NCBI GenBank assembly: GCA_038496445.1
Contig: JALMLS010000504.1
Span: forward strand, 132,399 to 196,398
From: Trichosphaerium sp. ATCC 40318
Taxonomy: Eukaryota; Protista; Tubulinea
Reading direction: 5' to 3'
DNA: 64,000 nt
The position numbers and the translations under genes were made by a program. Every line of letters begins with the position of its first letter. The first letter of the stretch is position 1. Under the pieces are notes generated by a model. The model was not told where the DNA came from and searched no databases. It saw nothing but the letters and a program-made list of their open reading frames with translations. Below are positions 3,300 to 63,912 of this stretch, piece by piece.

Positions 3300-5363
3300 A
3301 TGTATCCAAAGCGAAGTCAGTCCGAGGTAGATAGCAAAGGAGCTGAGAATAAACGCCATCTGAGGTAAGAGAACTGGATAAAGTCACAAAACGCTGTTTT
3401 TTAATGCATGTATTTTAGCCAAATGGATAAATACACACCGTCTGACTCTCGTACAAAGGTTAACGCAAACCTCTTTACACTGCCTAATGAGATTTTGGGC
3501 GTCATTCTCTGTTTTACTACCAAAGCACGTTATTCAGCCGCTCAGAGTTGTCACAGACTTGCCGCAATCGTTCATGATGTTATTGGGTACTACAGCGCGA
3601 CGTTGAAGACGATAGATGATGCCAAGGCTTTCGCAAAGTACAAGGGCGCTCTACAACACACCAATGTAAAAGTACTCAAATCAGTGCCAAGTGAAGGCAT
3701 CAAACTGCTTAAAGGCGTTCGTAGTGTCAATCTCAAGTATACCAATGTAACAGACGAAGCATTATCGTTCTTATCAGGTGTACACACCATCAACCTAAAG
3801 AGAACTCTGATAACAGACAAAGGTACTCATTCAAACTTAAACACGTGGACTGTCCGGTCTGAAAACACTCATCAGTTTAATACAACCATCTCCAATCACA
3901 TTTTTCTAATTTTATTCAACGATACCATCACGTTTTTTTTAAAAGCTTATCACGTGTTAGGTTTAAAAGCGCTTAAAGGTGCTCATACAATCAATCTTCA
4001 AGGAGTGCGAAGAATTACAGATGAAGGTATAAAAGCGCTTAAAGGTGCTCATAGTATCGACCTGAGACAAACCAAAGCAACAGACAATTCAATAAAAGTA
4101 TTCTCTGGGATTCACACTATTAATGTTGGTCGTACTAGAGTAACAGATGAAGGCATCAAAGCGCTTGCTGGTGTTCATACTATTGGCCTTGATAGAGCAA
4201 GGAAAGTTACAGATGAAGGTCTGAAAGCGCTTGCTGGTGTTCACACAATAGATTTTGACAACTGCAGGTGTACTATTGATGGTATAAAAGCGCTTAAAGG
4301 AGTTCACAAGATTAATTTGGCTGGAGCGGTTACAGATAAGATGCTCATGGTTCTGGCAGGTGTTCATACGATTGATCTTAGGTCTTGTTATCAATTTACA
4401 GATGAAGGTGTAAAAGCTCTTGCTGGGGTTCACACAATTAACCTGGAAAGAACTACAGTTACAGATGAAGGTGTGATACCACTTGCTGGTGTTCATACAA
4501 TTAGCCTTAATGATACCATGGTTACAGAAAGAGGTGTCAAAGCACTTGCAGGGGTTCATACAATTAGTTTAGACGGAATTTCAATAACAGATGAAGGCTT
4601 GAAAGCACTTGCGGGCGTCCATACAATCAGACTTGGAATGAATCAGGAATTTACAATTAAAGGAATGAAAGCTTTGGCAGGTGTTCATACTATACACCTT
4701 CCAGCATGTGATATTCCAGAACAGGGTGTTATATCACTGGCCGGCGTGCACAAAATCAACCTTTGGGAATCTAATATCACAGATAAAGGTCTCAAAGCTC
4801 TTTATGGAGTTCACACAATTTATCTCGGTGGCACTAATGTTACAGATGATGGTGTAAAAACACTTGCTGGTGTTCACACAATACACCTTCGTTCTACAAG
4901 AGTGACTGATGAAGGTGTAAAACCACTTGCAGGAGTCCATTTCATTGACCTGGAGTACACTGAAGTTACAGATGAAACATTAAAAGCACTTGCAGGAGTT
5001 CATACCATTAAACTTGCCCATTCTTCCCTGATAACGGATGAAGGTATAAAAGCGTTGAGTGGTGTTCATACGATTGATCTTAAGGACACTAAAGTTACAG
5101 ATGAAGGTGTCAAAGCACTTTCAGGTGTACACACTATAGATCTAGAGAGCACTAAAGTTACAGATGAAGGTGTAAAAGCACTTGTTGGCGTCCACGAAAT
5201 TTCTCTTAGATTTACAAGTGTTACAGATGAATGTGTTAATGCCCTAGCAGGTGTTCACACTATTAAAATGGGAGGAACAAAAGTGAGTGACAAAGGTATA
5301 GAAGCACTTCAGCTGGCTGGCGCATTTGTTATATCAAGTGAAAACAATGAAGGTTTCTGGTAA
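3300..5363 (+). CDS. F-box-like N-terminus + ~21 LRRs (GVHTIxL..T.VTDEGVKALA), copy A
   Basis: ATG at 3300; introns 3365-3418 and 3823-3960 (GT-AG). F-box-like LFTLPNEILGVILCF followed by ~24-aa LRRs. Near-identical inverted paralog at 30432-32508. Confidence 0.9.
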
Positions 5364-30431: not shown

Positions 30432-32508
30432 CTAGCATCTACCAGGTCGGCGTTCTTGACGGCCTAGACGTGATATAGAATATGCGCCAGCCAGCCGAAG
30501 TGCTTCTATACCTTTGTCACTCACTTTTGTTCCTCCCAGGCTAATAGTGTGAACACCTGCTAGGGCATTAACACATTCATCTGTAACACTTGTAAACCTC
30601 AGAGAAATATTGTGGACGCCACCAAGTGCTTTTACACCTTCATCTGTAACTTTAGTGCCCTCTAAATCTATAGTGTGTACACCTGAAAGTGCTTTGACCC
30701 CTTCATCTGTAACTTTAGTTTCCTTAAGATCAATCGTATGAACACCACTCAACGCTTTTATACCTTCATCCGTTATCAGGGAAGAATGGGCAAGTTTAAT
30801 AGTATGAACTCCTGCAAGTGCTTTTAATGTTTCATCTGTAACTTTAGTGTACTCCAGATCAATGAAATGAACTCCTGCAAGTGGTTTTGCACCTTCATCA
30901 GTCACTCTTGTACAACGAAGGTGTATTGTGTGAACACCAGCAAGTGCTTTTACACCATCATCTGTAACATTAGTGCCACCGAGATAAATTGTGTGAACAC
31001 CAGAAAGAGCTTTGAGACCTTTATCTGTGATATTAGATGCCGTAAGCTCTATTTCGTGCACACCGGCCAGTGATATAACACCCTGTTCTGGAATATCACA
31101 TGCTGGAAGGTCTATAGTATGAACACCTGCCAAAGCTTTCATTCCTTCAATTGTAAATTCCTTGTTCATTCCAAATGAGATTGTATGAACGCCCGCAAGC
31201 GCTTTCAAGCCTTCATCTGTTACTGAAATTCGCCTTAACCTAATTGTATGAACCCCTGCAAGTGCTTTGACACCTCTGTCTGTAACCTTGGTTTCATTGA
31301 GGTTAATTGTATGAACACCTGCAAGTGGTATCACACCTTCATCTGTAACTGTAGTTCTTTCCAGGTTAATTGTGTGAACCCCAGCAAGAGCTTTTACACC
31401 TTCATCTGTAAATCGACTACAAAACCTAAGCTTAATCGTATGAACTCCTGCCAGAACCATGAGCATCTCGTCTGTAACCACTCCATACAAATTAATCTTG
31501 TGAACTCCTTTAAGCGCTTTAATACCATCAATAGTACACCTGTAGTTGTCAAAATCTATTGTGTGAACACCAGCAAGCGCTTTCAGACCTTCAGCTGTAA
31601 CTTCACTCGCTCTATCAAGGCCAATAGTATGAACACCAGCAAGCGCTTTGATTCCTTCATCTGTTACTCTGGTACTACCAACATTAATAGTGTGAATCCC
31701 AGAGAATACTTTTATTGAACTATCTGTGGCTTTGGTATATCTTAGGTTGATACTATGAGCACCTTTAAGCGCTTTTATACCTTCATCTGTAATTCTTCGC
31801 ACTCCTTGAAGATTGATTGTATGAGCACCTTTAAGCGCTTTTAAACCTAACACGTGATAAGCTTTTCAAAAAACGTGATGTCATCGTTGAATACAAAATT
31901 AGAAAAATGTGATTGGAGATGGTTGTATTAAACTGGTGAGTGTTTTCAGACAGGACAGTCCACGTGTTTAAGTTTGAATGAGTACCTTTGTCTGTTATCA
32001 GAGTTCTCTTTAGGTTGATGGTGTGTACACCTGATAAGAACGATAATGCTTCGTCTGTTACATTGGTATACTTGAGATTGACACTACGAACGCCTTTAAG
32101 CAGTTTGATGCCTTCGCTTGGCACCGATTTGAGTACTTTTACATTGGTGTGTTGTAGAGCGCCCTTGTACTTTGCGAAAGCCTTGGCATCATCTATCGTC
32201 TTCAACGTCGCGCTGTAGTACCCAATAACATCATGAACAACTGTGGCAAGTCTGTGACAACTCTGAGCGGCTGAATAACGTGCTTTGGTAGTAAAACAGA
32301 GAATGACGCCCAAAATCTCATTAGGTAGTGTAAGGAGGTTTGCGTTAACCTTTGTACGAGAGTCAGACGGTGTGTATTTATCCATTTGGCTAAAATACAT
32401 GCATTAAAAAACAGCGTTTTGTGACTTTATCCAGTTCTCTTACCTCAGTTGGCGTTTATTCTCAGCTCCTTTGTTATCCACCTCGGACTGAGTTCGTTTT
32501 GGATACAT
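30432..32508 (-). CDS. F-box-like + LRR protein, copy B
   Basis: Same exon structure as copy A (ATG at 32508). The apparent frameshift between ORFs 31831-32400 and 30432-31853 lies inside the shared intron. Confidence 0.9.
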
Positions 32509-37475: not shown

Positions 37476-38493
37476 TCAGCTGCACCTTTGATTAGATCTC
37501 TTATATCTCAATGCTTGTCGCTTCGTTGTTGCATTACAATACGCAATAGGGTACAATCTATCCACTAGATCTGTCCATACCTTGGTCATGCCACCGCCGC
37601 CAATCGCAGCTACTTGACTCTGCGACACACGTTGCCAATCTGCTGCTGATTCTATTTTGAGCACATCAGCCATAGAACGCATGAACACCTTGACATTGTC
37701 CTCTTGTTTCCAAAAATGTTTCGGTTTTCTAGGCACTAACGACAAATGTCAGTAAATACATGCACACTCATGTGACATACCCGTAGAGTCAAATTTTGAG
37801 CCTATCCAATCATGATGTGGATACATGGTGCTCAGCATGCGACTGAACGAACCACGATAGTGTCTAAGAGTACATAAGCATGACTTCCAATCTTCTTGGG
37901 TACCTTAGAAAGCCAAAAGCTCCATCATACTCAAGAACACGTGTCAAGGCTACATTCTCCCAATCTTTAGGCTGTGAGATGTTTAGCCTGGCTTCCAACT
38001 AATAAAAACATTACAAAAGGGATGGATAGCATGGATAGATCATACAACTGTCAAGAAGTCTCGTCTGTGTTTAGCTGTGCACCAGTACCCACGATGTGCT
38101 TGTTCTAGAAAATGCACATGTTACTCACGTGAGCAATGAAACAGATTCTCTTCACGTACCAAAGCGCCAAGGTACCCAGTTGTGTCGTGGGTAATGGCGT
38201 TGGAGAAACTTTAACAAACTGCCGTACACGCTGTGTAAAAAAATGTCAGTTATGTTTTTTGTCTAATTGGCGTTTACTTCATCAAGCCAATACCACCAAG
38301 CGATCTGATTTGCGTTGTACGAACTGAGTGCCAATCATCCAGTTGATGCAGCGAAAGTGTCTCACTGACCTACACAGAGTGTCACGCTATAAAATAAAGC
38401 GTTTTTAGGTACGTGAGAAATAAATTTGGCTCTATTAGCGCGTTTGTTCCAGTAACACGGTGGAATCCTTCCTGGCATAATGCGACCGGCCAT
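37476..38493 (-). CDS. ~70-aa DWY tandem-repeat protein, paralog 1 (3 repeats, no nuclease)
   Basis: PPCYWNKRANRAKF..LDDWHSV..GGIGLM..YGSL..YPRHNW; HRGYW..PKDW..YRGSF..YPHHDW; PKHFW..ADWQRVS..GGGG. Confidence 0.75.
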
Positions 38494-43045: not shown

Positions 43046-45577
43046 CTATAGTGCCGGAAATAGTTCTTTTGTAGAGTGAATTAACCACCTATTTACACTT
43101 ATTAAGACAAGAATAGATTTCGATGACCGACGACTTGTTTTGTGCTTACCATTGGTTGGATTTCTTTTCCTTTCTATTGAACCTCGACCAATCCCACGGA
43201 AACTCAGGATATAGTACATCCTTAAGTATGCGTGGGTAGTATCTGAGCATACCACCTGCTCCAAAATGAGCCAACTGATCTCTAGAAACACGAATCCTAG
43301 CGAAGTCGAATAAGTTGTATGATTTGAAGTGAATGAATTACTACTAACCAATCAGAAGGTGTTGTTAGGTCCAAATGCTCCTCTACATGCTGAAGAAATG
43401 CTGTAGCATTTGTGCTGGATCTCCAAAAGCCCTTGCGATGAGGTTCTAAGGTCTGTAGCCGCATACGCCTAATGTACAGTACTTAGTAAGTGTTGAAGCT
43501 ACAATCAAAAGTAGTAATTGAGACTGACTTGTGTGCGAACTGGTCCATGTCCCAATCATGTGAATCGTAAAGATTAGACACGGCAGCAATCAATGATCCA
43601 CCGTGTTTGTTTATGATTGACAGACCTCCGTGGTTACAAGCGTCAGTACGCTTGGCATTATACCAATCATCCAACACGTGTATCCGTAGTTTTTGTCCAA
43701 GTGCATCTATTTGTAATCTCTCGACTGCTATCTCCTCAAGCATCCTAGCGTGTCTTTCAGACCCAGTAAGTTTGGCATATCGTACAGAGCTTTATTGTTA
43801 CCTGAAGTTGTTGAGCGACCAAGCGTGATACGGATAAAGTGTCTTGAGTGTCGAGGCCAAACTTCCACCATAACTATGGCGTAACAATGAGCTCTAACGT
43901 TTTACTGGTATACACGTGTACGCTGCGATGATTGATGATGCGCCATGTTCATGCACGTCACTTGGATCCACGGCATACCACCCATCTAACGTAGTTACTA
44001 CCAAGAGTTCTGCCAATCCTTCAAAGAGCGTCCTTTGTGCTGCAACGCTATTGATTGTTGATCTAGGAGCACTCCTTGAAACACTGTTAAAACAATGCAC
44101 GACAGCTTTCAGCACATACGCAAAGAGGTTATCTTGCCAAGAAAATGAAGGGAAAATAGACTGTACGGCCTTTTTGACCGATCCAAGGTACTTGTTAATC
44201 ACACTCGATCCACCAGCAGCGCAAATATCTTTTTTGGTAATGTAGTACCAATCTGCTAGCACCTTCATCTTGTACTCCTCCCCTATAGTCTCAAACTTGG
44301 TTCTTTGATTGCTCATATCGTCCCAATGCCTCATAGGTGCATGCCTTGATATCAAACTGTCAGATATACCACACTAGATCACTAATAACTTACGTAAAAC
44401 GAGTTTGACTCCACTTGATATGAGGATATACAGCAGCCAATGTCTTGGATAGGGAGTCCCCATGCCTACAGTCAATTATTCATTGCTCCGACTATATGAG
44501 CGCAAGACAATACCTTGAAAGCAGGTTTGATCCCTTGCGTGAAATAACTTGTTGGTATGTCACGTTATACCAATCCTCCATTAGGTGTATCCTTAATTGC
44601 CTTGCTATGGCACTCAATAGCTCTTCTTCACTTGGTTGCATTTCAACCCTAACAGTGCGTTCACTTTTGCGAGTGCTTCGAGTCTTGGAGTGACTGCTAA
44701 CACTTGTATAAACAACCACAAAACGCGTCTTATTCAAGACGCACTAGAATCGATTCAAGTCCCAGTTGTGTTCCGAGTATATAGATCTCACAGCATCCAC
44801 TATCGAATTTCGATATCTGTAACAACATTCAGGAAAATAAGTTGGTAAACACACGACCATGAGTACTTTTGAAGGAGACCACCAGCAAGTGAAACACATT
44901 TGTCATTTGCTATGAAGTACCAATCATCCAGTACTTTTATGCCTAACGTCATGCCTACAGCATCAAGTTTTGTACGTTGATTGCCTTTGAACGACCAATG
45001 ACCCATTGGCGCACACCTACGTATATTGGCATTAGACACGTGTGCACCAAACGTTATGAAATTTAACTTTATTATTGGACAAGAGAGCTAACCTTGTAAA
45101 CGCGTTGGCATCCCAAGTATTAGATGGATACACTGATGTGAGTGCCTTGCATATAGAGTTGTTATACCTAAGCAAAAAACGCACATGGCATGTCACGTGG
45201 AGTGTCCAGTACATGAGATAAACAAAAAGTCGCACCTATTCATCATAGGCTTGCCCCCAAGGCGGTTAATGTCATCACCGGTGACATCGTACCTGAGGAT
45301 TTGTGCTGTGAGCAGATTGGCGCAAATGGGAAAACCCCAAAATCAAAATACAGGGTTTAGGTGATGCGTACCAGTCTGGTACAACGAATACGCATACATG
45401 TTGCGCTATTTGTTCGAGATAGGCTCTTTGATTTGAAATGTTTTCCCAATATCCCGCTGGCTTACGTCCAGCGCCATCAGGGACATTTTGAGTGCGTCGA
45501 CGAGAGGATTTGGCGACAGCTAATGGCATCTGTAAATACATGCTTCGAAAGGCCTTTGTACCGCGTAGTATGGACAT
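43046..45577 (-). CDS. ~70-aa DWY tandem-repeat protein, paralog 2 (~7 repeats; stops where the nuclease domain would begin)
   Basis: KPAGYWENISNQRAYLE, LDDWY, MEDWY, LADWY, LDGWY, LDDWY, PSDW. Ends KKSNQWWLIHSTKELFPAL*. Basic, acid-free N-terminus. Confidence 0.8.
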
Positions 45578-45732
45578 TGACGCCACGAGACGGCTAGTCT
45601 AGTGCACGCTAAGCGTTGCGTTGAAAATAATGGACAAACTTGACGCTGTGACCACACACGACCATCACATACCGCTTTTTAAACCACGCTCGTGGTGACT
45701 CTTACACTAAAACTCTCAACAAATAATGCTGG

Positions 45733-54055: not shown

Positions 54056-55637
54056 CTACTCTATGTACTCTCTACTTTGAATACCCGTGACAATGAGATT
54101 GTTGAGCGTATCCTCTCGTCCTTCAACGTATAGTGCTTCTATCTCCACTTTTATTCCACCTTCGATCTTTGACATATGTTAAAGGTAGACGAGGAACATC
54201 AAGTACCATTGCACATATTTGTTCGTCAGCTGATTGACACCACCCTCGATTGCTTATGTTGGCAATACAACGTGTATCACCCTCTGTCATTGGTTTGTAT
54301 TCGGTGTGAGGTACCTAGTCACGTGATTACAAACTATATATTTTGTTCCAAAGCCTACCTTATATTTGTTCAAGTGATGCCCTAAGACACCTAGCCACTT
54401 GATGTTTACATTGTATCGACAGTTTTCCATGCCCAGACTGTATCCTCCTTGCTTGTAGCTCAGTAATACCCCTACACCACCTACAACACTTGTTTGTCGA
54501 TGACAAGGATGTTTGTTGGTTAGCGTACCAGGGTTGTAGTCAAAGACGCCATAGCATGGTAGATGTAAAGATTGCTGCAATATCGAAACAAAACGCCTAG
54601 TCTATAGACCAAATACGTTATGGACAAGCTCTCAAAATGAAGTCAGTCTACTAACCATGAGCCCAGGGTAGCCGTTCCCTGTTACCACTATAAAGTTGGG
54701 ATACTTCTTTATGAAACCGCTTGCTACCAAATGCTCAAAAACAGCATCCTTCTCTACTACAACGATGGCTGTCGCTGAAGATTCGAGATCAATGTTGGGA
54801 TGCGATAGGGTGTATGCAGTTTCGTCAAATTGTGCTATGCGATGGAAAAAAGAACCTAACACGGCTTTTCAACACTTGTGCGGGTATATCTATTGAGAAC
54901 GTACGGATCACAAATGGAACAGTTGACAAATCTACCCAACTTCCTCCTAACCAACTTATATGAGTGGACATTCTAAATATGTTCTTTCACCTGCTATACT
55001 AACACGTAGGGTTCCAGCAATGAAGCGCCCTTGTTCGGCGGGATGTATGGACATGGCACTTCGTGGACATTTCAATATGCTTTGGAGATCTACGTTGTTT
55101 TAGCAATGCGGGTAAGGATAAGTAGGTACCTCCAAGTATGCCAGACACTTTTGTGTAGCTGTTATCCATCGACCATTTTGCACTTAGACAGTAGTACGCC
55201 TGTCATGGTTTAGATTGTACGTGTAAGCGCTATACCTCTCTGATGGATGATCTCTGGTTGTTTCGCACTTGGCTGTAGATCATTGCAAGAGCTGAGAAAA
55301 TACGAGCATACTTCTTTGGCTTGCTTTTGAATGAGCACTTTGCATTGTTGCGGGCAAGGAAAATGCAGCCATCAGTATCGGCTACTCGAGCTTAGCAACT
55401 TTCCTTCTACGTGCACCTGCCTGAGTTAAATGCGTTGTCGCTAGTGCGTATTGCCACGTTTACAGGATTCAATGTAGACTGTTTCAAGCTGCTGGCAAAG
55501 GAAATGAGCCAACCCTCTATCCTCGCTAACACCTGTACAGTACAGTGTTAGCACGCTTTCCGTGGAAATGCAGCGTGCCGTACTTGGGTAGGACCAATGT
55601 TATGTGCATAGTGGATGGAAGGAAGCTTATAAAACAT
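54056..55637 (-). CDS. SPO11-2: Meiotic recombination protein SPO11-2 type (TopoVIA family)
   Basis: QVLARIEG, SIREAYY (catalytic Tyr motif), IVVVEKDAVFEHL, TGNGYPG, VFDYNPGGVGVLLSYKQGGYSLGMENCRYNVNIKWLG, KVEIEAL. Confidence 0.88.
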
Positions 55638-55841
55638 GGATTCTGCCAAGCTCATCTTAGCTGCCGTTGAAGATCTTGTTTTTTTGCAATGTGTGACTTA
55701 ACTTCGTGCGTTTTGATTGTTTAGCTGGTTTATTGTGGCAAGTACATGCTGTCATGATCACAGAATCGACGCACCTGTCTTTGTTGGCTTGTGACACGCC
55801 GCACGTCAGTTTCTGTTATTTTAGCGTCAGTAACGCATAAA

Positions 55842-58654
55842 ATGCGTACAATACTTAACGCAGGTACGAGCGAACGGTTTATTTTCTCTGTAATTACAAT
55901 TACAGAGAAAGCGCGCTATTCTGTAGCAGACAGTGCAAATACTGTTGGATACACACTCCAAGTGCGAACGCTAGACGATTGGTATCGCGTAAAAGGTTGT
56001 GAAGTGGACAGTGCTGCTCGACCTGTTATTGAAGAGTACGCTAATGAGAGTGTAGACTAATGCTTACGCGTGGTGTAGGCATAATGGATCTATCAGTGAC
56101 TACTTAGTAGCGGCTTATCCTCGTTATAAATGGGATCGCATGCAATTCACGTGCGCAAGTTAAGTCTTTGTACTGCACGCTAAATTTGATGGTAGGCACG
56201 TACCAAATGCTTACACAAAGCATTGTTCTCGATTGGCTGTCATGGACACATTCGCACAAGACAATGACCTTAAAACTTTGGATTCGTGGTATGACCTTGA
56301 TGTCAGTACTATCCGAAGAGCGAAGGGTTTATCCAGTTTGCTGGCAGGGTATCCATTCATGTTTTCTATTTGCACGCCTAATAATTGTTTGACAATAGGT
56401 ATTACGACAACAGCTTAGAAAAGGCGCTGTATACATTATATCCTGAGTATGGATGGCTTGATACCAAATTTTTGTGCGCGTTCAAATTGTCTTGGTAATC
56501 CTCCGTATTAACGTTATATATGCAGTCACGCTAAGGGCTATTGGTCTCACATATCAAATCAAAGAGATAAACTCGAGCAGATATCAAGACGCAAGCGCTT
56601 CATGACTTTTGATGGCTGGTACAGCATGGATTGGCAGTCAGCGTGCTACCTCGGTGCAGGCTCAATGTTGCAAAGGTATGTATATATAGCTAGTCACTGG
56701 TCGTTTCTTGCAGTAACGTGTACACCCAAGATATAACTCATCAATCGCCTCAGCCTTAGAGGCTATCTTTCCAGAGCATCCATGGGCACGCCAGGCTTTC
56801 AGGTATGTGATGGGTAACAAGATGGGATGCTAACTAGGTTGTTATTAGTACGGTTCCAAGAGGTCATTGGGATAGTATTCAATCGCATAGAGATACCTTC
56901 AACAGACTGGCTGAAACATTGGATATATATACAATGGACATGTGGCTCAGTGTAGACAAGAAGCAAGTGAGTACGCATGGAGGTGGTAATGTACTTGCAA
57001 AGTGCGTTAATTACTGTTTGCTTCATCTTAAAACTTGATTAAAGGTACAACCATGACCTCAAGGCTGCTCTTGATGCTATTTATCCTTCTTTTTTGTGGT
57101 GTGAGACCGAGCTGCAGTGCGTATTACCCATTATTTGATTGACTAGTAATTTAACTTACACGTCCAGGCAAGCGCAATTGAGTCACATCTCCGCCTATCA
57201 CGGTCTCTGGATAGCTAAGGTGGGCGAGTATTTGGGCGTTAAGACCTTGGAAGAGTGGTATGAGGTAACCTTAGAAGACAAGGTACCCAATGGCGTACTT
57301 AACAACGTGGTGTCGAGGTACGATCCACCAGCTGTAGAAACGTGATTAACAGCTGTGCTGAGGTATTCAAATTCAATGTACAGTATGCTAAAAGCATTGT
57401 ATCCCATGTACGACTGGCAAATGTACAAATTTAGGTACTCAACAGAATTGGTAAGATCCCATTCTTATACCGTTGAGGCCATTGTCGACTAGGCGTAGAG
57501 TGACGATAAAGTACTTTGACCAGGTTGACAATCAGCGTCAAAAGTTAGAGAGTGTTGCACAAGCCTTAAAGGTTAAAACGGTGGATGCATGGCGTTTGAT
57601 CTCCAAGCAACAGTTTGTACAGCATGCAAAAGCAGTCTTGAAGAGGTACAGGGGATCAATCAGCCGTACCTTGGACGCCATTTACCCTTTGACAGCCGCC
57701 AGTCATTGCGAACTCAAGTACAACTTCTATATTGACCTAAGCTATCACTGACTTGTTGTAGGACTCGTAAAGAGCAAAGAATTAGTGGTTACTGGAAAGG
57801 TAGTGTGATATGTTCACTCATTTTATTTCGGTAGCTTACTCGCGTAGATACTAAAAACGTTACTAAGTTTTTGAAGAAGCTAGAACGCAAACTCAGCATT
57901 TCTAACCCGACAGCATGGTACTTAGAAAGTTGATACGTTAATAACGCATACATGGTAGGTATAGAGTATCTCTAGGCCAACTATTAGCACATGGAGGCGG
58001 TGGACTTGCACACCATTTCCCGTCAGTGCTGGCACAACTACATCCGCATGTAGATTGGCATTGGAACTCTTTCTCATTAAGCGATAAGCGCTCAGTTCAA
58101 AGGTACCTATTTTACACATGCAAGCTGTTTAGTATTTTTTTTGCTATGTGCTATGACAAATACTAATTTTGTGACCAGGAATCTGGTTGAGTACGTTCGT
58201 GCAATTTTTCCAAATTTGGTGGTGGAAGAGGACCATTCTATAGGCACTCTAGATAGCAACGGTGCGCCCATAGTAGTTGATGTGTTTGTGCCTGCACATA
58301 ACCTGGGTATCGAGTATCAAGGCACGTTTTATACACAAAATGGTAGTCACGTGAAGCTAAGTGATCTTGCGTACTGTAGGTGAGCATCATTACATGGATG
58401 TCCTCAAGAACGCACATCCAGTCTCCGTGTACGCTTCAAGGGATGTGGAAAAGGCGGAACAATGTCAATCGCTTGGTGTTACACTCGTAAACTTACCTTA
58501 TTGGCGTCTGGACGGTATACAGTCTGTAGTTGAGGTCATAAGGGTCCAAGCTCCACATACTGTGGCTCATTGGCCAGGTAGCTCATTTGGCTGCCGATTG
58601 CCACCTACAGAGCAGCACAATTCAGGTACGCCATCATGTAGTGGGGGCGGGTAG
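55842..58654 (+). CDS. ~70-aa DWY tandem-repeat protein, paralog 3 (7 repeats) with C-terminal Vsr/DUF559/RAP-like PD-(D/E)XK nuclease domain
   Basis: Repeat cores DDWY, DSWY, DGWY, DMWL, EEWY, DAWR, TAWY. Then IFPNLVVEED..IVVDVFVPAHNLGIEYQGEHHY..RDVEKAEQCQSLGVTLVNLPYW. The start codon is uncertain. Confidence 0.8.
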
Positions 58655-58884
58655 ATGAACCAGTAACATGATTGACACGTGATAGGATATTCAACTGCCT
58701 TCGCACGACAACAAATGCAAGTTGCAGCACTTAGATTTGGCGTTGAAACTGTACAATAGTAAAATTTACAAACATAACATAAATACATGAAGAAAATTTT
58801 CAAATCGTTTATTTTTGACACTTTGAAATCTATTTGACGTTCGTTTACCACAACAATACGCTAAACGAATGATAAGCAAGAAGC

Positions 58885-61517
58885 ATGGCCTCTCAATCTG
58901 AAAGTAGTAAAGGCACCAAGTTTATAAAGGAATGCCTTGAGAAAGATCTATTGAGGATATTGCTTCAGCATCTTGAAGCAAAGGGATACAATGAAACCAT
59001 GCATAGGTGTGTTGATGCGTTTAGTGGAAATGTGTAATTTAACATGCGCCTTTTTCAGCTTAGAGGCTGAAAGCAAGTATTATTTCGATAAAGAATACTT
59101 TGCAGGGCTATTTGTAGATGGATCATGGGATTTATTGTCCCAATACATGAATAAGTTCTTTACCCGGCCCCTCAATGGCCCGAAACGCGATATAATGTAT
59201 GACATTTGTCGTCACAAGTTTTTAGATGCTTTAGACAAGTGCGCATTACATTTTGTTGAAATGTGACTAAACCAACGTAGAGGAGATAAACTCACGGCAA
59301 AGGTCGTATTAAAACGCGAATTGGCGGTTTTTTTAAATGCAACACCGCCATGTGACACATCAACGCCTTCGTATATCGCATACCTCGATATGGCGTCGCT
59401 CTTGCATATGGATAACTTCAGGTTTGTACTCAATGTGTTGTGGGCGCGATTTCACATTTTTTTCAATCAGGGAGCATCCTCACTTGGTATGGCGTGGTAA
59501 TGCTAAACAAATGAGAGAACACAGCGTCAATAAGGTAGGTGTTACTCATATTGTGTTTTAAGTGGTATTTATCTATTAAACAGATTGTGTCGCACATACA
59601 GGAGCATTTACCGCTTACTGTTACACCAGAACTGCCAAAGATACCCGAAAAGGAGAGATTGCGATCGCTTATAAATCAAAGGCATGTGCAAATACTGTGA
59701 GACACGCAACACGTGACACAGTTGTTTTTTGAGATGACTGATTGAAATATTTAGTTTTAATTATCAAACACACAAGGTCGGCACCCCTGGCGGAGCTAGG
59801 CCCACTATTCACACGCTTCTTGTCGATTTTGGCAAGGATGATGAGAGGAATCCCTACGGACACTATGGGTTATTGTCTAAGAAGAAACGTAGCCGCGAAG
59901 TATCGTCTTCTAGTAGCCAACCTGCGCCAAAGAGATCGAAGCACAACTTTGCAAAAATTAAACCGATAACAGTATGTCATGCTACCTGCACTTCATTCTG
60001 TAACCATTCGATAGGCACACGATAAGATGTTGGAGAGTGGGAAAGTGCATATACGTAACAACCTATTACAATTTCCACGTGCAACCGAATCGTGCATATC
60101 ATTTCACACAAAGAAATTCAATTACGTATTGAGTGCGTATTATCCTACATGTATCATACGCATAACACTCGATGCAATGTAGTGAACCATGCCACCCAGA
60201 AATTAGGATTGTTTGACACATCAACAGTTGAGTTGCGCCTTGTTATGGAAATTGACACAGAATGCACTTCAGTTGGCAAGTTGGCATGGGATCCTACTGG
60301 CACATACTTTGGTTCGTTCTCTTTATTTTGAAGCTACAGTGTACCGTACAGTAGTACTTATTATTGTATGTTGTGTATAGTTGCAGCAGACATTGATCAA
60401 TGGGAGTTGTTCAAAGTTGACTGGACAGCAGGAACAGCAAAGTCAGTAGCAGTGACAAAGGGTTCAGGATTAACAGATATCATTTTCGCGACTTTACCTA
60501 TAGGTCACCGCGTCTCGGTACCAGAAAAAATGTTGTGCCTCCTCTACAATCAAGACAATACTATAGAGGTAGCTACATATTCATAAAATCCATAACTATA
60601 AGGTCTTTGGTTGACACATGCTTGATATAGATGTACGATGTTGAAAACAAGAAACGCGTTTGTAGGTTTGAAGGGCACAAGGTACGCGACCCACGGAGCA
60701 CACACTACACCAGCGCCACTGTGCACCTTTAAATAGTAATTTAATGTGTTTTAGGCGCCAGTAGCCTCTATGGATACCATATTTCGTCAAGGAGGCCAAG
60801 TACCATTCCTTGTTTCAGTCGGTACGCATATTGCACATTGACATTGGTTTAGTAAGGATGATGAGGCTAACTAATCTTTGTTTGCAACAGATGTATCAGA
60901 GAAAATGAACATATACCCCTTTGAGCTATTAGGTGATAGTAACGTAATAACTATTAAACCAGTGGCAAGTATGGACAATCCCTATCAAACGTGCGCTCTG
61001 CTTTTAATAAACAATGTGTACCTCCTACTAACTCATTATTTCTACAGTATTAGGACTGTATGTTGCCCCGACAGCGAGACACTGATTACAATCAGCTCAT
61101 CAGACTCATCTTTCATACAATGGAGTACAGTAAGTGTCAAACACAAGGTAATTTGTGGGTTGTGTGACTCATCACTTATTAGGACGGGCAAGGCATCGTC
61201 AAGAATTTTACACCATACAAATGCACAACACACACCAGGCTTATGTCTGTGCGCGATCTACTGGCTGTAAATCACGAAAAGTATCTAAGCGTTTGGCAGC
61301 GCACAAATGAAAATGTAAGTTTAGTTGTCAGTAGGCTGTGGCTCATTTTTTTTTGTAGTCAGTGGGCACTGTGAAATTTAAAGGACCAGTGAGGTCTTTT
61401 GCTATTAGCGCTGATGGCAAATGTATTGCGGCAGCTGTAATAAGAAATGGTCAAGTGACACTTTCATTGGTCCACAACATTTTTGACAGTTGGGGTGTAA
61501 ATGTAGATGTTGTTTGA
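58885..61517 (+). CDS. TOPLESS-like protein (LisH-CTLH-CRA + degenerate WD40)
   Basis: DLLRILLQHLEAKGYNETMH.LEAESKYYFDKEYF..GSWD, ICRHKFLDALDK, LLHMDNFREH, RLRSLINQSFNYQ..IHTLLVD. WD-like LAWDPTG and FAISADGK. Confidence 0.8.
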
Positions 61518-61585: not shown

Positions 61586-63912
61586 TTACAGTTTGGCCAA
61601 TTCCTTTAGCCTTGTTAAATGTTGTACATCTTGCAGTGGCACGCCCAACGTTTGAATGTGTTTAACATACGCTGTGACATCTAGTTTGAACTGTAGCGTC
61701 ATAAAAGCGATATCGCTTTCAAGTGACGTCTGCTGTAACGATGTCTTGCGTGCCAGCCTCGTTTTCTCGCCAGCAATCTTCTCGACAACGGACGTTCCCA
61801 AGATGGCGTAGCTATCACCTGGTTAAAAAACACTCCAAGAAGAGGTACAGCTTACCTGTGCGTCAGCTCAGAAAGTAGTGGAATGTGAAAGTAATTGGTG
61901 CAGTATGTGTTGTCTGGAAGTACAGGAGCAGCCAACAACCTCGTCCACCTGTGTATAGGTTCAAACGCAGCGTTGACATACGCCATGCATTTTACAGGCT
62001 TTGCCTTTCCTTGCTAAGAAATGTAGGTTAGACCAAAGCTCTTTGGTGGGTGAGTAAGTACCATACGGTAGTGCATGACAGTCATTTTAACCTTTGTCAA
62101 GCTCTTTTGTGCTGTTTTCAAAACTCTTTGTTTGGTGCGCTCCAGCAACCGTTTAATGGCTTCCACCGGTGCACTAACTCCAGCCACTACCTTGCGCGCA
62201 CCGTGTTCCATCTGCGGGTCGATGTTTGCCAGCAGTTTCCCTACTTTATCGGCGTATGTAGTGGATTGGTGTTTGTATAGTGCCGATAGATCTGCGATCA
62301 AGTTATCTGCTGGTGCGCCCGTCTCCTCCGCACAACACCATGTGCTGTACCTGCAATAAAATAAGCATGGCTGACGCACAGTCGGGCTTACCGTTTAATG
62401 ACTTGGATAGCTAGTTTTAAAAAATCGTGTGCAAGTGGTCGAAGAAATAATTTTGGAGACCAAATCTCGTCCAGAAGTGTCACTGTTTGAACGGAGGATG
62501 CCAGTTTGAAGTTGAACAAGTTCTCAGTTGCACGTTTTGGTGCAACAGTTTCAGTGAGCTGTGCAAGACACTTGTCGACCAACTCTTTCTGCACCATCGT
62601 GAAGTACACGCGCAATGGCATCGTCCAACGCTTCATCAAGTTGGTGTAGTGTCCACTTTGTCTGAAAGCCAGCAAGTACTTGTGTTGTTGAGGCAACCGC
62701 GCTTCTAACCCAGAACATAACATCATACACGCAGAGTAATTGGCGTGTATGGCGGCAGGTACTGTTGTTGGAAAAACAATACGGCTAATCGATTGTTCTT
62801 GCAGCGCCTCGACTACAGGCTGGAAAACGCCTAGTGTAACTATTGTTGCCACCAGGCGATTGTGTGATGCCTCTGCTGCGACTGCCAGGAGGCGGCCGAG
62901 TTGTTGGTCCACGTGTTTGAGTAACTGATCCACAAATTGGTCGACAGCACGCGTTCCTCGCAGTTCCTTCGATCTCTTTTGCCACAAAAAATTTAATGAT
63001 AGATTTTTTACAAAAGGACCAAGTGTTCGCACGCACCTCTTTAAGAAAGGAGTCGATGTAGTGGTGTTGTATGACATGTACGAGCGGGTGTGGATCCGTT
63101 GATTGTGCGTGATTGCCATGCGCAAGCATGTACACGGACAGGGCATCCCGTAAGAGTACCTTTTGACCATCGCCATGATCCACCTGGCCTTCCAAAAAAA
63201 CGGGCGCCATTCTCTTTAAAATTCGCGATCGCACGACTTGTAATCGCTACGTGACACGTTAATAATGTACAAGCGTTTGACGTGCGCAGAGACGTTTGCT
63301 AACCTTGTTCATCAAAATCACGAATGCTTCGCTACCCTCCCACTCTTTTACAGATTCTAGCAGGTTCCTCACAGTGACGAGCAAGTTGGCTGCGCCTAGC
63401 AGCGTGTCACATTCTTCTGTTGCGTCTGTAGCACTTTGCTTGAGTAAAAGTGCTTCAAGCTGTTCTGTAGCATTGCATATTGCTTTGTAACGCGTCAAAA
63501 TATCGTTAGAGCGACTACAGCGCTCTGCCACCGCTAGCTTATCAGATAGATCATTCCAGCACTCAGTAACGCCGTCTTCAACTATGTTCGCCTCCTGTTG
63601 TAGCACTAGGAGCTTTGGGCGAATGTGGTGAATTTTTTCAATGATTTTGTCTCGTTCTGCGTGTAAATCTTTAAATAAGTGTAAATTGTCGTGTATGGCA
63701 ACTGCCAAGTCGCTCGAAATCTTTTTCAGCTGTGTGTCGAGATACGACCGCACATAGTCAATAGAGCCTACCCTACTCTGTCCTTCTACAACCTTGTACG
63801 AGTAATCAATGCTTGGTTTGTTTTTGACACGTACAATATTCAAAACGGGCTGGTCGCCTTGTAGTTGTTGGTCTATCCAAAACTCAAATGATTTAAGTGC
63901 CGGTGTCAATTG
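61586..63912 (-). CDS. COG2: Conserved oligomeric Golgi complex subunit 2-like (first exon not resolved)
   Basis: DLAVAIHDNLHLFKDL, LMKRWTMPLRVYF, IWSPKLFLRPLAHDFLKLAIQVIKR, LQFKLDV match the COG2 pattern. Confidence 0.7.

What the first reader, a model, noticed from the sequence alone, without database searches (positions are those of the whole stretch)
55842..58654. Tandem ~70-aa repeat array fused to a PD-(D/E)XK-type nuclease: candidate modular sequence-targeting nuclease
Seen: after splicing, seven divergent ~70-aa repeats share a fixed scaffold (P.G[YH]W....NQR..L / L.I..LD.WY / GG..LL..Y.[GN]S...AL..IYP...W....F) with variable residues between. They are followed by VVDVFVPAHNLGIEYQGEHHY...RDVEK...C..LGVTLV.LPYW. 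Known: D-x10-E-x-(Q/D)G-x-x-HY followed by RD.xK is the Vsr/DUF559/RAP-like endonuclease signature. Repeat-array + nuclease layouts underlie TAL-FokI fusions and organellar OPR/HPR-RAP proteins. Inference: each repeat may be a small helical module reading DNA or RNA, giving a natural programmable nuclease or RNA-processing family. I recall similar repeats in hypothetical protist proteins but know of no functional description; this needs verifying.
Basis: partly seen in the sequence, partly recalled or inferred. Interest (0 to 1): 0.88.

Follow-up and report, generated by a model that had tools for sequence, protein, structure and literature searches.

The report
Repeat array fused to Vsr-like nuclease
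An expressed, 18-exon protist gene encodes seven ~75-residue helical modules followed by an intact Vsr/DUF559-type nuclease domain; it belongs to a very large, unnamed and untested protein family (protists, some bacteria, viral metagenomes) that may be a new class of nucleic-acid-targeting enzymes.

Summary
A repeat profile built only from other organisms' proteins finds exactly seven repeats (33-70 bits each; shuffles reach 5 bits at most). The C-terminal domain keeps all six residues that are invariant in the family (D572, E583, G586, H589, D607, K610).

The repeats are confident five-helix modules (pLDDT 96) with no solved relative. Their nearest structural kin is DUF4046, a family of unknown function. 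No Pfam model detects them reliably.

The family is huge: 7,713 representative proteins, 5-25 repeats each. More than half of the best 153 carry this nuclease. Some add a LigE-type DNA ligase. One bacterial MAG encodes the same architecture without introns.

I found no functional description. My reading is a repeat-guided endonuclease, with DNA slightly favoured over organellar RNA. A one-repeat-one-base 'programmable' code is untested. First readers of this scan noted the same family on other pieces of this genome. Verdict: new variant of a known kind, interest about 0.6.

The parts
55842..58759 (+). Whole coding region: 18 exons, 17 introns, 691 aa. Exons: 55842-55863, 55906-56035, 56079-56150, 56196-56348, 56399-56473, 56526-56675, 56731-56802, 56849-57001, 57045-57116, 57168-57317, 57363-57434, 57478-57717, 57762-57799, 57848-57917, 57959-58102, 58179-58321, 58380-58625, 58686-58759.
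   Evidence: Spliced transcript contigs X1, X2 and X3. Splice sites and translation checked.
55842..56150 (+). Repeat 1 (aa 6-74), exons 1-3. It is N-terminally truncated: it lacks the P-x-G-Y-W start, and the protein begins 5 residues before it.
   Evidence: hmmsearch domains.
56196..56473 (+). Repeat 2 (aa 76-150), exon pair 153 + 75 nt.
56526..56802 (+). Repeat 3 (aa 151-224), exon pair 150 + 72 nt. Keeps the G-Y-W and N-Q-R motifs.
56849..57116 (+). Repeat 4 (aa 226-299), exon pair 153 + 72 nt.
57168..57434 (+). Repeat 5 (aa 300-373), exon pair 150 + 72 nt.
57478..57717 (+). Repeat 6 (aa 381-453), a single 240-nt exon. Strongly basic (pI 10.0).
57762..58102 (+). Repeat 7 (aa 460-528), three exons, basic (pI 10.2). 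The end of exon 15 already encodes the first helix of the nuclease domain.
58179..58625 (+). Core of the Vsr/DUF559/DUF2726-like PD-(D/E)XK domain (exons 16-17), carrying D572, E583, G586, H589, D607 and K610. The GC-AG intron 58322-58379 splits the G586 codon inside the E-Y-Q-G-E-H-H motif.
   Evidence: Family profile hit of 112.7 bits. Invariant columns. Fold of the homologue's domain.
58686..58759 (+). Last exon: a 23-residue C-terminal tail and the stop codon.
   Evidence: Joints and loose ends at 58626/58685 in X1, X2 and X3. Translation.

Best explanation
This is a normal, expressed nuclear gene for a repeat-guided endonuclease.

Shown:
- Seven ~75-residue modules, each of five short helices, form the N-terminal 530 residues. 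On a homologue they are predicted to pack into one rigid array.
- The array is basic overall (pI 9.3). The two modules next to the catalytic domain have pI about 10.
- It is followed by a Vsr/DUF559/DUF2726-branch PD-(D/E)XK domain that retains every residue invariant across the family.

Inferred:
- The array lies along a nucleic acid and positions the C-terminal domain to cut or nick it.
- Conserved polar residues (the N-Q-R at the start of helix A, and basic positions 14, 23 and 27) would make backbone contacts.
- The variable positions of helices A, C and D, which I take to be surface-facing, would give each paralogue its own target.

I favour DNA as substrate. This could include organellar DNA for paralogues that carry presequence-like N-termini. 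The window copy has no such extension.
For: - The gene is expressed and spliced.
- Seven repeats are found by an independent profile.
- AlphaFold2 on three repeats of homologue P0057 gives pLDDT 96 and pTM 0.80, all helical.
- The family is basic: median pI 9.4, 88% above 8. The window protein has pI 8.9 and repeats 6-7 about 10.
- Nuclease domain: D, E, G, H, D and K are invariant in 40 divergent members and all present in the window protein. The model has an alpha-beta-beta-beta-alpha-beta core.
- Pfam DUF2726 matches 15 of 40 members. DUF559 scores above threshold in two repeat-bearing relatives.
- The architecture is conserved in 84-90 of 153 top members and in an intronless bacterial ORF.

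Pointers to DNA:
- Vsr and I-Bth0305I are DNA enzymes.
- More than 400 prokaryotic and 272 viral-contig relatives of the nuclease domain exist. One is fused to NUMOD3 and treble-clef zinc modules typical of homing endonucleases.
- Family members fuse the nuclease directly to a LigE-type ATP-dependent DNA ligase.
- The repeat fold recurs in prokaryotic proteins named restriction endonuclease, DUF559, LAGLIDADG or HNH.
Against: - No binding or cleavage has been measured for any member.
- Both structure models are of a homologue (28% identical overall, 41% in the nuclease domain), not of the window protein.
- Five of the window's seven repeats have lost the N-Q-R motif, and repeats 1, 2, 4 and 5 are mildly acidic. 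This copy is therefore a degenerate member.
- RAP domains match the nuclease model as well as Vsr does, and at least one RAP protein (FASTKD4) binds RNA without cutting (PMC11879112).
- In P0113, P0115 and P0148 (of the five ligase fusions read) the ligase motif-I lysine is replaced, so those fusions may not ligate.
- The variable positions show no code-like pattern.
Confidence: 0.5

Rival explanations
1. It is an organellar RNA-processing or RNA-stabilising factor, the functional counterpart of OPR-RAP, HPR-RAP and FASTK proteins. The helical array would bind a specific mitochondrial transcript, and the Vsr-like domain would cleave it or merely hold it.
For: - UniProt and ESM Atlas automatic names for family members include 'RAP domain-containing protein (Fragment)'.
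- N-terminal extensions of 82 family members are enriched in basic residues and poor in acidic ones: 19% and 5%, against 14.7% and 11% overall.
- A paralogue 10 kb away starts with a presequence-like 46 residues.
- The family occurs in Amoebozoa and Heterolobosea, lineages where a survey detected no RAP proteins (PMC8190603).
- First readers reported many paralogues in this genome.
Against: - The Pfam RAP model matches none of 40 nuclease domains at E <= 0.1.
- The window protein itself has no N-terminal extension; repeat 1 starts at residue 6.
- Bacterial members cannot be organellar.
- The fusions are to DNA-type ligases and the prokaryotic kin are homing-endonuclease-like.
- No such protein appears in solved mitoribosome structures.
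Confidence: 0.3
2. The repeats are a protein-protein or non-specific scaffold. The C-terminal domain would be a non-targeted or inactive nuclease fold, so there is no sequence-directed activity.
For: - This copy's repeats are degenerate and partly acidic.
- Surface variability is what any repeat protein shows.
- Nuclease-less paralogues exist in the same window.
- FASTKD4 shows that a Vsr-like fold can lose catalysis (PMC11879112).
Against: - Strict invariance of six catalytic-type residues across members only 21-34% identical to the reference argues for an active site under selection.
- The family is basic overall.
- The array is repeatedly joined to nucleic-acid enzymes: DUF2726-like, DUF559 and DNA ligase.
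Confidence: 0.12
3. It is a selfish or recently transferred element: a homing endonuclease or a giant-virus-derived gene, rather than a host gene.
For: - The nuclease's closest characterised relative by fold includes the homing endonuclease I-Bth0305I.
- Atlas clusters of the family are partly labelled Nucleocytoviricota.
Against: - The gene has 17 spliceosomal introns and a composition like its surroundings.
- It sits between ordinary nuclear genes: Spo11, TOPLESS-like, COG2.
- It is not inside an intron or intein.
- No match to isolate viral proteins in BFVD.
Confidence: 0.04

Closest known systems
RAP-domain helical-repeat proteins (human FASTK/FASTKD1-5, Chlamydomonas OPR-RAP, apicomplexan HPR/RAP proteins)
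   Same: - An N-terminal array of helical repeats followed by a C-terminal Vsr-like PD-(D/E)XK domain.
- Many members have presequence-like N-termini.
- Some are auto-named RAP.
   Different: - The repeat unit is a ~75-residue five-helix module, not a 34-40-residue helical hairpin.
- The Pfam RAP model does not match.
- The catalytic-type residues are strictly conserved here, whereas FASTKD4 is reported as non-catalytic (PMC11879112).
- Members occur in bacteria.
Vsr endonuclease, DUF559 (NGO0050, PDB 3hrl), DUF2726, and the homing endonuclease I-Bth0305I
   Same: - A D ... E-x-(Q/D)-G-x-x-H ... (R)D-x-x-K pattern.
- DUF2726 or DUF559 Pfam hits in family members.
- I-Bth0305I also couples this catalytic domain to a separate DNA-binding region (PMC3239194, abstract).
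   Different: - Those proteins lack the 75-residue repeat array.
- The window domain belongs to a distinct E-Y-Q-G-E-(Q/H)-H / P-Y-W-W subfamily that current Pfam models catch only weakly (best E 6.7e-6; 15 of 40 members).
DUF4046 (PF13255) and the homing-endonuclease-associated repeat (PF18780)
   Same: - Three repeats of the family superpose on DUF4046 proteins at TM 0.63-0.74 over more than 215 residues.
- A minority of family members carry precomputed or weak PF13255 hits.
- Prokaryotic proteins with the same repeat fold are named restriction endonuclease, DUF559, LAGLIDADG or HNH.
   Different: - Sequence match to PF13255 is below threshold (4 of 60 members, best E 0.01).
- Match to PF18780 is weak in structure (TM 0.40), and PF18780 was not among the 25 most-matched Pfam families.
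- DUF4046 itself has no known function.
TALE arrays / TALE-FokI fusions, PUF and PPR proteins (one repeat per base)
   Same: In concept only: a tandem helical array that could carry a nuclease to a site.
   Different: - The unit length is 75, against 33-36 residues.
- There is no discrete hypervariable residue pair.
- No fold match.
- No binding data.
Prokaryotic and viral E-Y-Q-G-x-Q-H nucleases with other targeting modules (e.g. locus L007, a Woesearchaeota MAG: NUMOD3 + DUF4379 treble-clef fingers + nuclease)
   Same: - The nuclease domain is 30-48% identical, including the helix that precedes it.
- The logic is modular: DNA-binding modules plus nuclease.
   Different: The targeting modules differ. 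Only one of 160 fetched loci (L018) has the 75-residue repeats.

Membership tests
PD-(D/E)XK superfamily, Vsr/DUF559/DUF2726 branch | An alpha-beta-beta-beta-alpha-beta core fold that matches Vsr-like structures better than other PD-(D/E)XK enzymes. | tested here: met
   [not shown]
PD-(D/E)XK superfamily, Vsr/DUF559/DUF2726 branch | Conserved acidic, His and Lys residues at the active-site positions. | tested here: met
   D, E, G, H, D and K are invariant in 40 members. The window protein has D572, E583, G586, H589, D607 and K610.
PD-(D/E)XK superfamily, Vsr/DUF559/DUF2726 branch | A Pfam model (DUF2726 or DUF559) above its gathering score. | tested here: inconclusive
   The window domain is split by an intron, and its two pieces give no hit. 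In the family, P0149 scores 29.6 bits on DUF2726 (cut-off 24.7) and 15 of 40 members match at E <= 0.1. P0180 and P0206 exceed the DUF559 cut-off.
PD-(D/E)XK superfamily, Vsr/DUF559/DUF2726 branch | Metal-dependent phosphodiester cleavage. | not testable with these tools
   Needs a biochemical assay.
RAP domain proteins (PF08373; FASTK, OPR-RAP, HPR-RAP) | A match to the RAP sequence model. | tested here: not met
   0 of 40 nuclease domains match PF08373 at E <= 0.1. A language-model search lists a RAP cluster only at score 0.77. Some UniProt entries of the family are auto-named RAP.
RAP domain proteins (PF08373; FASTK, OPR-RAP, HPR-RAP) | An N-terminal array of 34-40-residue helical-hairpin repeats or FAST_1/FAST_2 domains. 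| tested here: not met
   The period is 75-77 residues with five helical segments per unit. No FAST, PPR, OPR or TPR Pfam hit.
RAP domain proteins (PF08373; FASTK, OPR-RAP, HPR-RAP) | Import into mitochondria or plastids. | tested here: inconclusive
   N-termini are presequence-like in many members and in the neighbouring paralogue. The window protein has no extension. No targeting predictor or experiment was available.
DUF4046 (PF13255) | A Pfam model above its gathering score (22.8 bits). | tested here: not met
   The window repeats give no hit. 4 of 60 three-repeat segments match at E 0.01-1, and the reference segment P0057:94-316 scores 15.3 bits (E 0.03). A few relatives have precomputed PF13255.
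DUF4046 (PF13255) | The same repeat fold. | tested here: met
   TM 0.71/0.63 to a Bacillota DUF4046 cluster. TM 0.63-0.74 and Foldseek E 1.6e-5 to AFDB DUF4046 proteins.
TALE/PUF/PPR-type one-repeat-one-base readers | A few hypervariable specificity positions per repeat, with a demonstrated recognition code. | tested here: not met
   Entropy over 1,059 repeats shows about 20 variable positions, which fall in helices A, C1, C2 and D on the model's secondary-structure map. There is no discrete pair. Binding could not be tested.
Homing endonucleases (mobile) | Encoded within a self-splicing intron or intein, or free-standing in a mobile context next to its target site. | tested here: not met
   It is a multi-intron nuclear gene between Spo11-like, TOPLESS-like and COG2 genes.

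The most novel reading that the evidence does not exclude
The ~75-residue modules are a previously unrecognised class of sequence-reading units. Each module would contact a fixed number of nucleotides through a few surface positions. The expanded paralogues, with nuclease, nuclease-ligase or no effector, would then form a natural, re-targetable toolkit for cutting and in some members rejoining specific sites in organellar or nuclear nucleic acids. This would be a third protein-only 'code' besides TALE and PPR/PUF.
Probability: 0.12. Interest if true: 0.92.

Novelty: new variant of a known kind. Interest (0 to 1): 0.62.

Why it matters
Helical-repeat arrays joined to Vsr-like domains are how animals, green algae and apicomplexans control organellar RNAs (FASTK, OPR-RAP, HPR-RAP). 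Modular binding domains joined to nucleases are how homing endonucleases, and engineered fusions such as TALE-FokI, find their sites.

This gene represents a third, structurally different solution, and it is not rare. A profile of its repeats retrieves 7,713 representative proteins, with 5-25 repeats each. They come from Amoebozoa, Heterolobosea and other protists, some bacteria and viral metagenomes. All those with a functional name are called hypothetical. No Pfam model reliably detects the repeat, no solved structure matches it, and I found no paper on it.

The family includes members in lineages where RAP proteins were reported undetectable. It also includes fusions of nuclease and DNA ligase behind the same array. 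If the array proves to bind nucleic acid specifically, two things follow. It would explain part of organelle or genome maintenance in these protists. It would also give a compact, confidently predicted scaffold for engineering.

If the array does not bind specifically, the finding is still a large family with a predicted fold that lacks a solved relative, and it deserves a curated model.

Tried and rejected
- Pfam on single exons of the window gene and on unspliced ORFs gave nothing meaningful. The nuclease domain is split by an intron, and the spliced protein has no reference to hand to the tools. I therefore worked through family members with ids and checked the window protein locally with HMMs.
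- The search for homologous proteins found only 2 hits with P0057 and with the three-repeat alignment, because of its word index and length window. It worked with the bacterial ORF L018.
- The search for related loci with the repeat alignment failed: no stretch was conserved enough.
- A profile search of PDB sequences with the nuclease alignment found nothing real.
- The Myb_Rap1 hit in P0004 and the SAM_TNK, TagF_N and CH hits are scattered and mostly sub-threshold, and I treated them as noise. The P0004 Myb_Rap1 hit exceeds its cut-off only by summing over Trp-rich repeats.
- Organism identification by exact look-up of a window ORF failed. I did not pursue it further.
- Literature searches found no description of the family. 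Terms tried: DUF4046, PF13255, PF18780, HNH_repeat, DUF2726, UniProt accessions of members, and DUF559 + repeat + mitochondria.
- Pseudogene reading: rejected. The spliced frame is open over 691 codons and all invariant residues are kept. The X1 junction at intron 3 remains unexplained.
Full report
GENE MODEL AND OBSERVATION

The stretch is eukaryotic, with many short introns. Four public runs hold near-identical sequence. Laid on window 55700-58900, contigs from three of them are spliced: one 2,035-nt contig of run X1 spans nearly the whole gene, and shorter contigs of X2 and X3 confirm several junctions.

From these junctions and the sequence I built an 18-exon model with 17 introns of 41-76 nt. 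Sixteen are GT-AG and one is GC-AG (58322-58379). It translates without a stop into 691 residues, CDS 55842-58759.

All three runs remove a last intron (58626-58685), so the protein ends 23 residues later, at 58759.

One discrepancy remains. X1 shows a non-canonical junction at intron 3 that adds 4 nt. X2 supports the in-frame GT-AG junction 56151-56195, which I used.

THE REPEATS ARE REAL

The repeat exons of this gene align with unsplit repeats of two paralogues on the minus strand (43.1-45.6 kb and 37.5-38.4 kb).

An HMM built from 1,053 repeats of other organisms' proteins, with the window excluded, finds exactly seven repeats in the window protein. They score 33-70 bits each and 351 bits in total. 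200 shuffles of the protein reach at most 5 bits.

Repeats 1-5 are each encoded by an exon pair of about 150 + 72 nt, with introns at the same positions of the repeat. This agrees with another first-reader note (s1-372734). There is no DNA-level tandem repeat, so the array arose by old duplications of a two-exon unit.

This copy is a divergent member. Only repeats 3 and 6 keep the family's N-Q-R motif. Repeats 1, 2, 4 and 5 are mildly acidic, and repeats 6-7 next to the catalytic domain have pI about 10.

A VERY LARGE, UNNAMED FAMILY

A profile of the window's repeats, scored against 1.84 billion representative proteins, gives 7,713 proteins at E <= 1e-3 and 1,429 at E <= 1e-30. The listed 150 have 5-25 repeats each, with a period of 75-77 residues.

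Named sources are transcriptomes or genomes of:
- Cavostelium apophysatum and Physarum polycephalum (Amoebozoa);
- Heterolobosea sp. BB2;
- an MMETSP protist;
- many unnamed ENA, JGI and Logan assemblies.

ESM Atlas clusters add Tubulinea, Discosea and metagenomic Nucleocytoviricota labels.

One bacterial MAG contig (L018, Deltaproteobacteria) carries an intronless 577-residue ORF with six repeats and the same nuclease. It lies beside a Schlafen AlbA_2/HATPase_c_4 gene. Its 209 detected homologues include Desulfobulbus and Thermoguttaceae entries. Of the 120 listed, almost every source name given is 'hypothetical protein'.

Pfam has no model that detects the repeat. Five literature searches found no description of it. 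The closest full-length relative of the window protein among the hits is P0057: 28% identity over 651 aligned positions, E 2e-92.

THE C-TERMINAL DOMAIN

84-90 of the 153 proteins in hand carry the same domain after the array. In an alignment of 40 of them, D, E, G, H, D and K are invariant and Q, P, Y, P, W, W nearly so. The pattern is D ... E-Y-Q-G-x-x-H ... (R)D-x-x-K ... P-Y-W-W.

The window protein matches the profile of this alignment at 112.7 bits over aa 510-648. It has D572, E583, G586, H589, D607 and K610. The GC-AG intron lies inside the E-Y-Q-G motif.

Pfam results:
- DUF2726 matches 15 of 40 members (best E 6.7e-6), and one member exceeds the cut-off.
- Two repeat-bearing relatives exceed the DUF559 cut-off.
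- The RAP model matches none.

A language-model search with the window's own exon 17 points to the same set of families as leads.

THE REPEAT FOLD

AlphaFold2 on three consecutive repeats of P0057 with 60 aligned triplets gives pLDDT 96 and pTM 0.80. Each unit has helix A (positions 10-23, starting with N-Q-R), short helix B (29-34, D-W-Y), helices C1 and C2 around the G-G pair, and helix D (56-63). A P-x-x-x-W-x-x-x-x-F turn then packs on the next unit.

The high pTM, together with TM 0.7-0.92 to other family members in AFDB, indicates a fixed inter-repeat geometry.

The nearest described family is DUF4046, of unknown function: TM 0.63-0.74, Foldseek E 1.6e-5. At sequence level the match is sub-threshold. 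The homing-endonuclease-associated repeat PF18780 is a weaker structural neighbour (TM 0.40). Prokaryotic proteins with this repeat fold are named restriction endonuclease, DUF559, LAGLIDADG or HNH in AFDB.

Across 1,059 repeats, the conserved positions are aromatic or aliphatic residues, which I take to form the core, plus N12, Q13, R14, D18, D31, G44, G45 and S55. About 20 variable positions fall in helices A, C1, C2 and D on the secondary-structure map of the model. No discrete hypervariable pair stands out.

CLUES TO FUNCTION

The family is basic: median pI 9.4, 88% above 8.

The nuclease subfamily is widespread in prokaryotes (more than 400 loci) and in viral contigs (272 loci). There it follows diverse N-terminal regions. 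In a Woesearchaeota MAG it follows NUMOD3 and treble-clef zinc modules, a homing-endonuclease-like layout.

Several family members place an ATP-dependent DNA ligase domain directly after the nuclease (P0113, P0115, P0117, P0148). In Physarum P0108 the order is nuclease, ligase, repeats. The P0108 ligase matches three solved minimal ATP-dependent DNA ligases (E 1.7e-18), which from memory are of the LigE type, and exceeds the PF01068 cut-off. P0108 and P0117 keep the motif-I lysine; in P0113, P0115 and P0148 it is replaced. This agrees with first-reader notes on other pieces of this genome (s1-378509, s1-383639), which I did not check on their own DNA.

N-terminal extensions of 82 members are rich in basic and poor in acidic residues. 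The paralogue at 45586 starts with a presequence-like 46 residues. The window protein has no extension.

A published survey did not detect RAP proteins in Amoebozoa or Excavata (PMC8190603). The FASTKD4 structure paper shows that RAP is Vsr-like and can be non-catalytic (PMC11879112).

INTERPRETATION

Shown:
- An expressed gene.
- Seven repeats.
- A conserved array-plus-nuclease architecture.
- Catalytic-type residues retained.
- On a homologue, a Vsr-branch fold and a rigid all-helical array.

Inferred: the array binds a nucleic acid and positions the nuclease.

I put DNA slightly ahead of organellar RNA. The reasons are the DNA-ligase fusions, the homing-endonuclease-like prokaryotic kin, the Vsr/I-Bth0305I similarity and the bacterial members. 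The RAP-like similarity and the presequence-like N-termini keep the RNA reading alive at about 0.3. The two readings could both hold for different paralogues.

A one-repeat-one-base code is neither supported nor excluded (about 0.12). The gene is not a mobile homing endonuclease: it has 17 spliceosomal introns and sits among ordinary nuclear genes.

VERDICT

This is a new variant of a known kind (helical array plus Vsr-like nuclease). It belongs to a large family that is present in databases only as hypothetical proteins, and no function has been described for it in the literature searched. Interest is 0.62.

Noticed in passing
window 43046-45586 (-) and 37476-38436 (-): Two paralogues of the same repeat family, 10-18 kb upstream on the other strand. 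The C-terminal nuclease part of the query finds no match there. The first begins with a 46-residue basic, presequence-like N-terminus before its first G-Y-W motif.
   Followed up: partly
window 56151-56198: Transcript contig X1 joins 56155 to 56198 with one extra G. This is a non-canonical junction that adds 4 nt and would shift the frame. X2 uses the canonical in-frame GT-AG intron 56151-56195. It could be a strain difference, an unproductive isoform or an assembly artefact.
   Followed up: partly
window 58322-58379: A GC-AG intron, the only non-GT donor of the gene. It splits the glycine codon inside the catalytic E-Y-Q-G-E-H-H motif. The junction is seen in all three runs.
   Followed up: yes
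window 54632-54862 (-): An exon of a Spo11/topoisomerase VI-A gene lies just upstream on the opposite strand (Toprim domain, 34.5 bits).
   Followed up: partly
window 58885-59266 (+): The next gene downstream starts about 125 nt after the stop. It looks like a TOPLESS-like protein: a sub-threshold TPR1-like CTLH-domain hit (24.9 bits, cut-off 27), and the N-terminus resembles a LisH motif by eye.
   Followed up: partly
window 3408-5363 (+) and 30432-32400 (-): Two near-identical, inverted copies of a long LRR_6 leucine-rich-repeat gene lie 25 kb apart. The first is one 651-residue ORF. The second is split into two ORFs of 189 and 473 aa, so it has an intron or is broken.
   Followed up: no
window 62388-63909 (-): Probable COG2 (conserved oligomeric Golgi complex) gene. 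It shows an ordinary nuclear housekeeping context.
   Followed up: partly
L018:1792-3525 (+) (Deltaproteobacteria MAG contig JAUXGL010000049.1): An intronless bacterial ORF of 577 residues with six of the same repeats plus the same nuclease domain. It lies next to a Schlafen AlbA_2/HATPase_c_4 gene. It would be a convenient protein for biochemistry.
   Followed up: partly
proteins P0108 (Physarum polycephalum), P0113, P0115, P0117, P0148: Family members in which the nuclease domain is followed directly by a LigE-type ATP-dependent DNA ligase domain. Motif I (K-x-D-G) is intact in P0108 and P0117, and the lysine is replaced in P0113, P0115 and P0148.
   Followed up: partly
L007:3395-4495 (+) (Woesearchaeota MAG): The same nuclease subfamily is fused to NUMOD3 and two DUF4379 treble-clef zinc modules, on both sides of the nuclease. 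This is a homing-endonuclease-like layout.
   Followed up: partly
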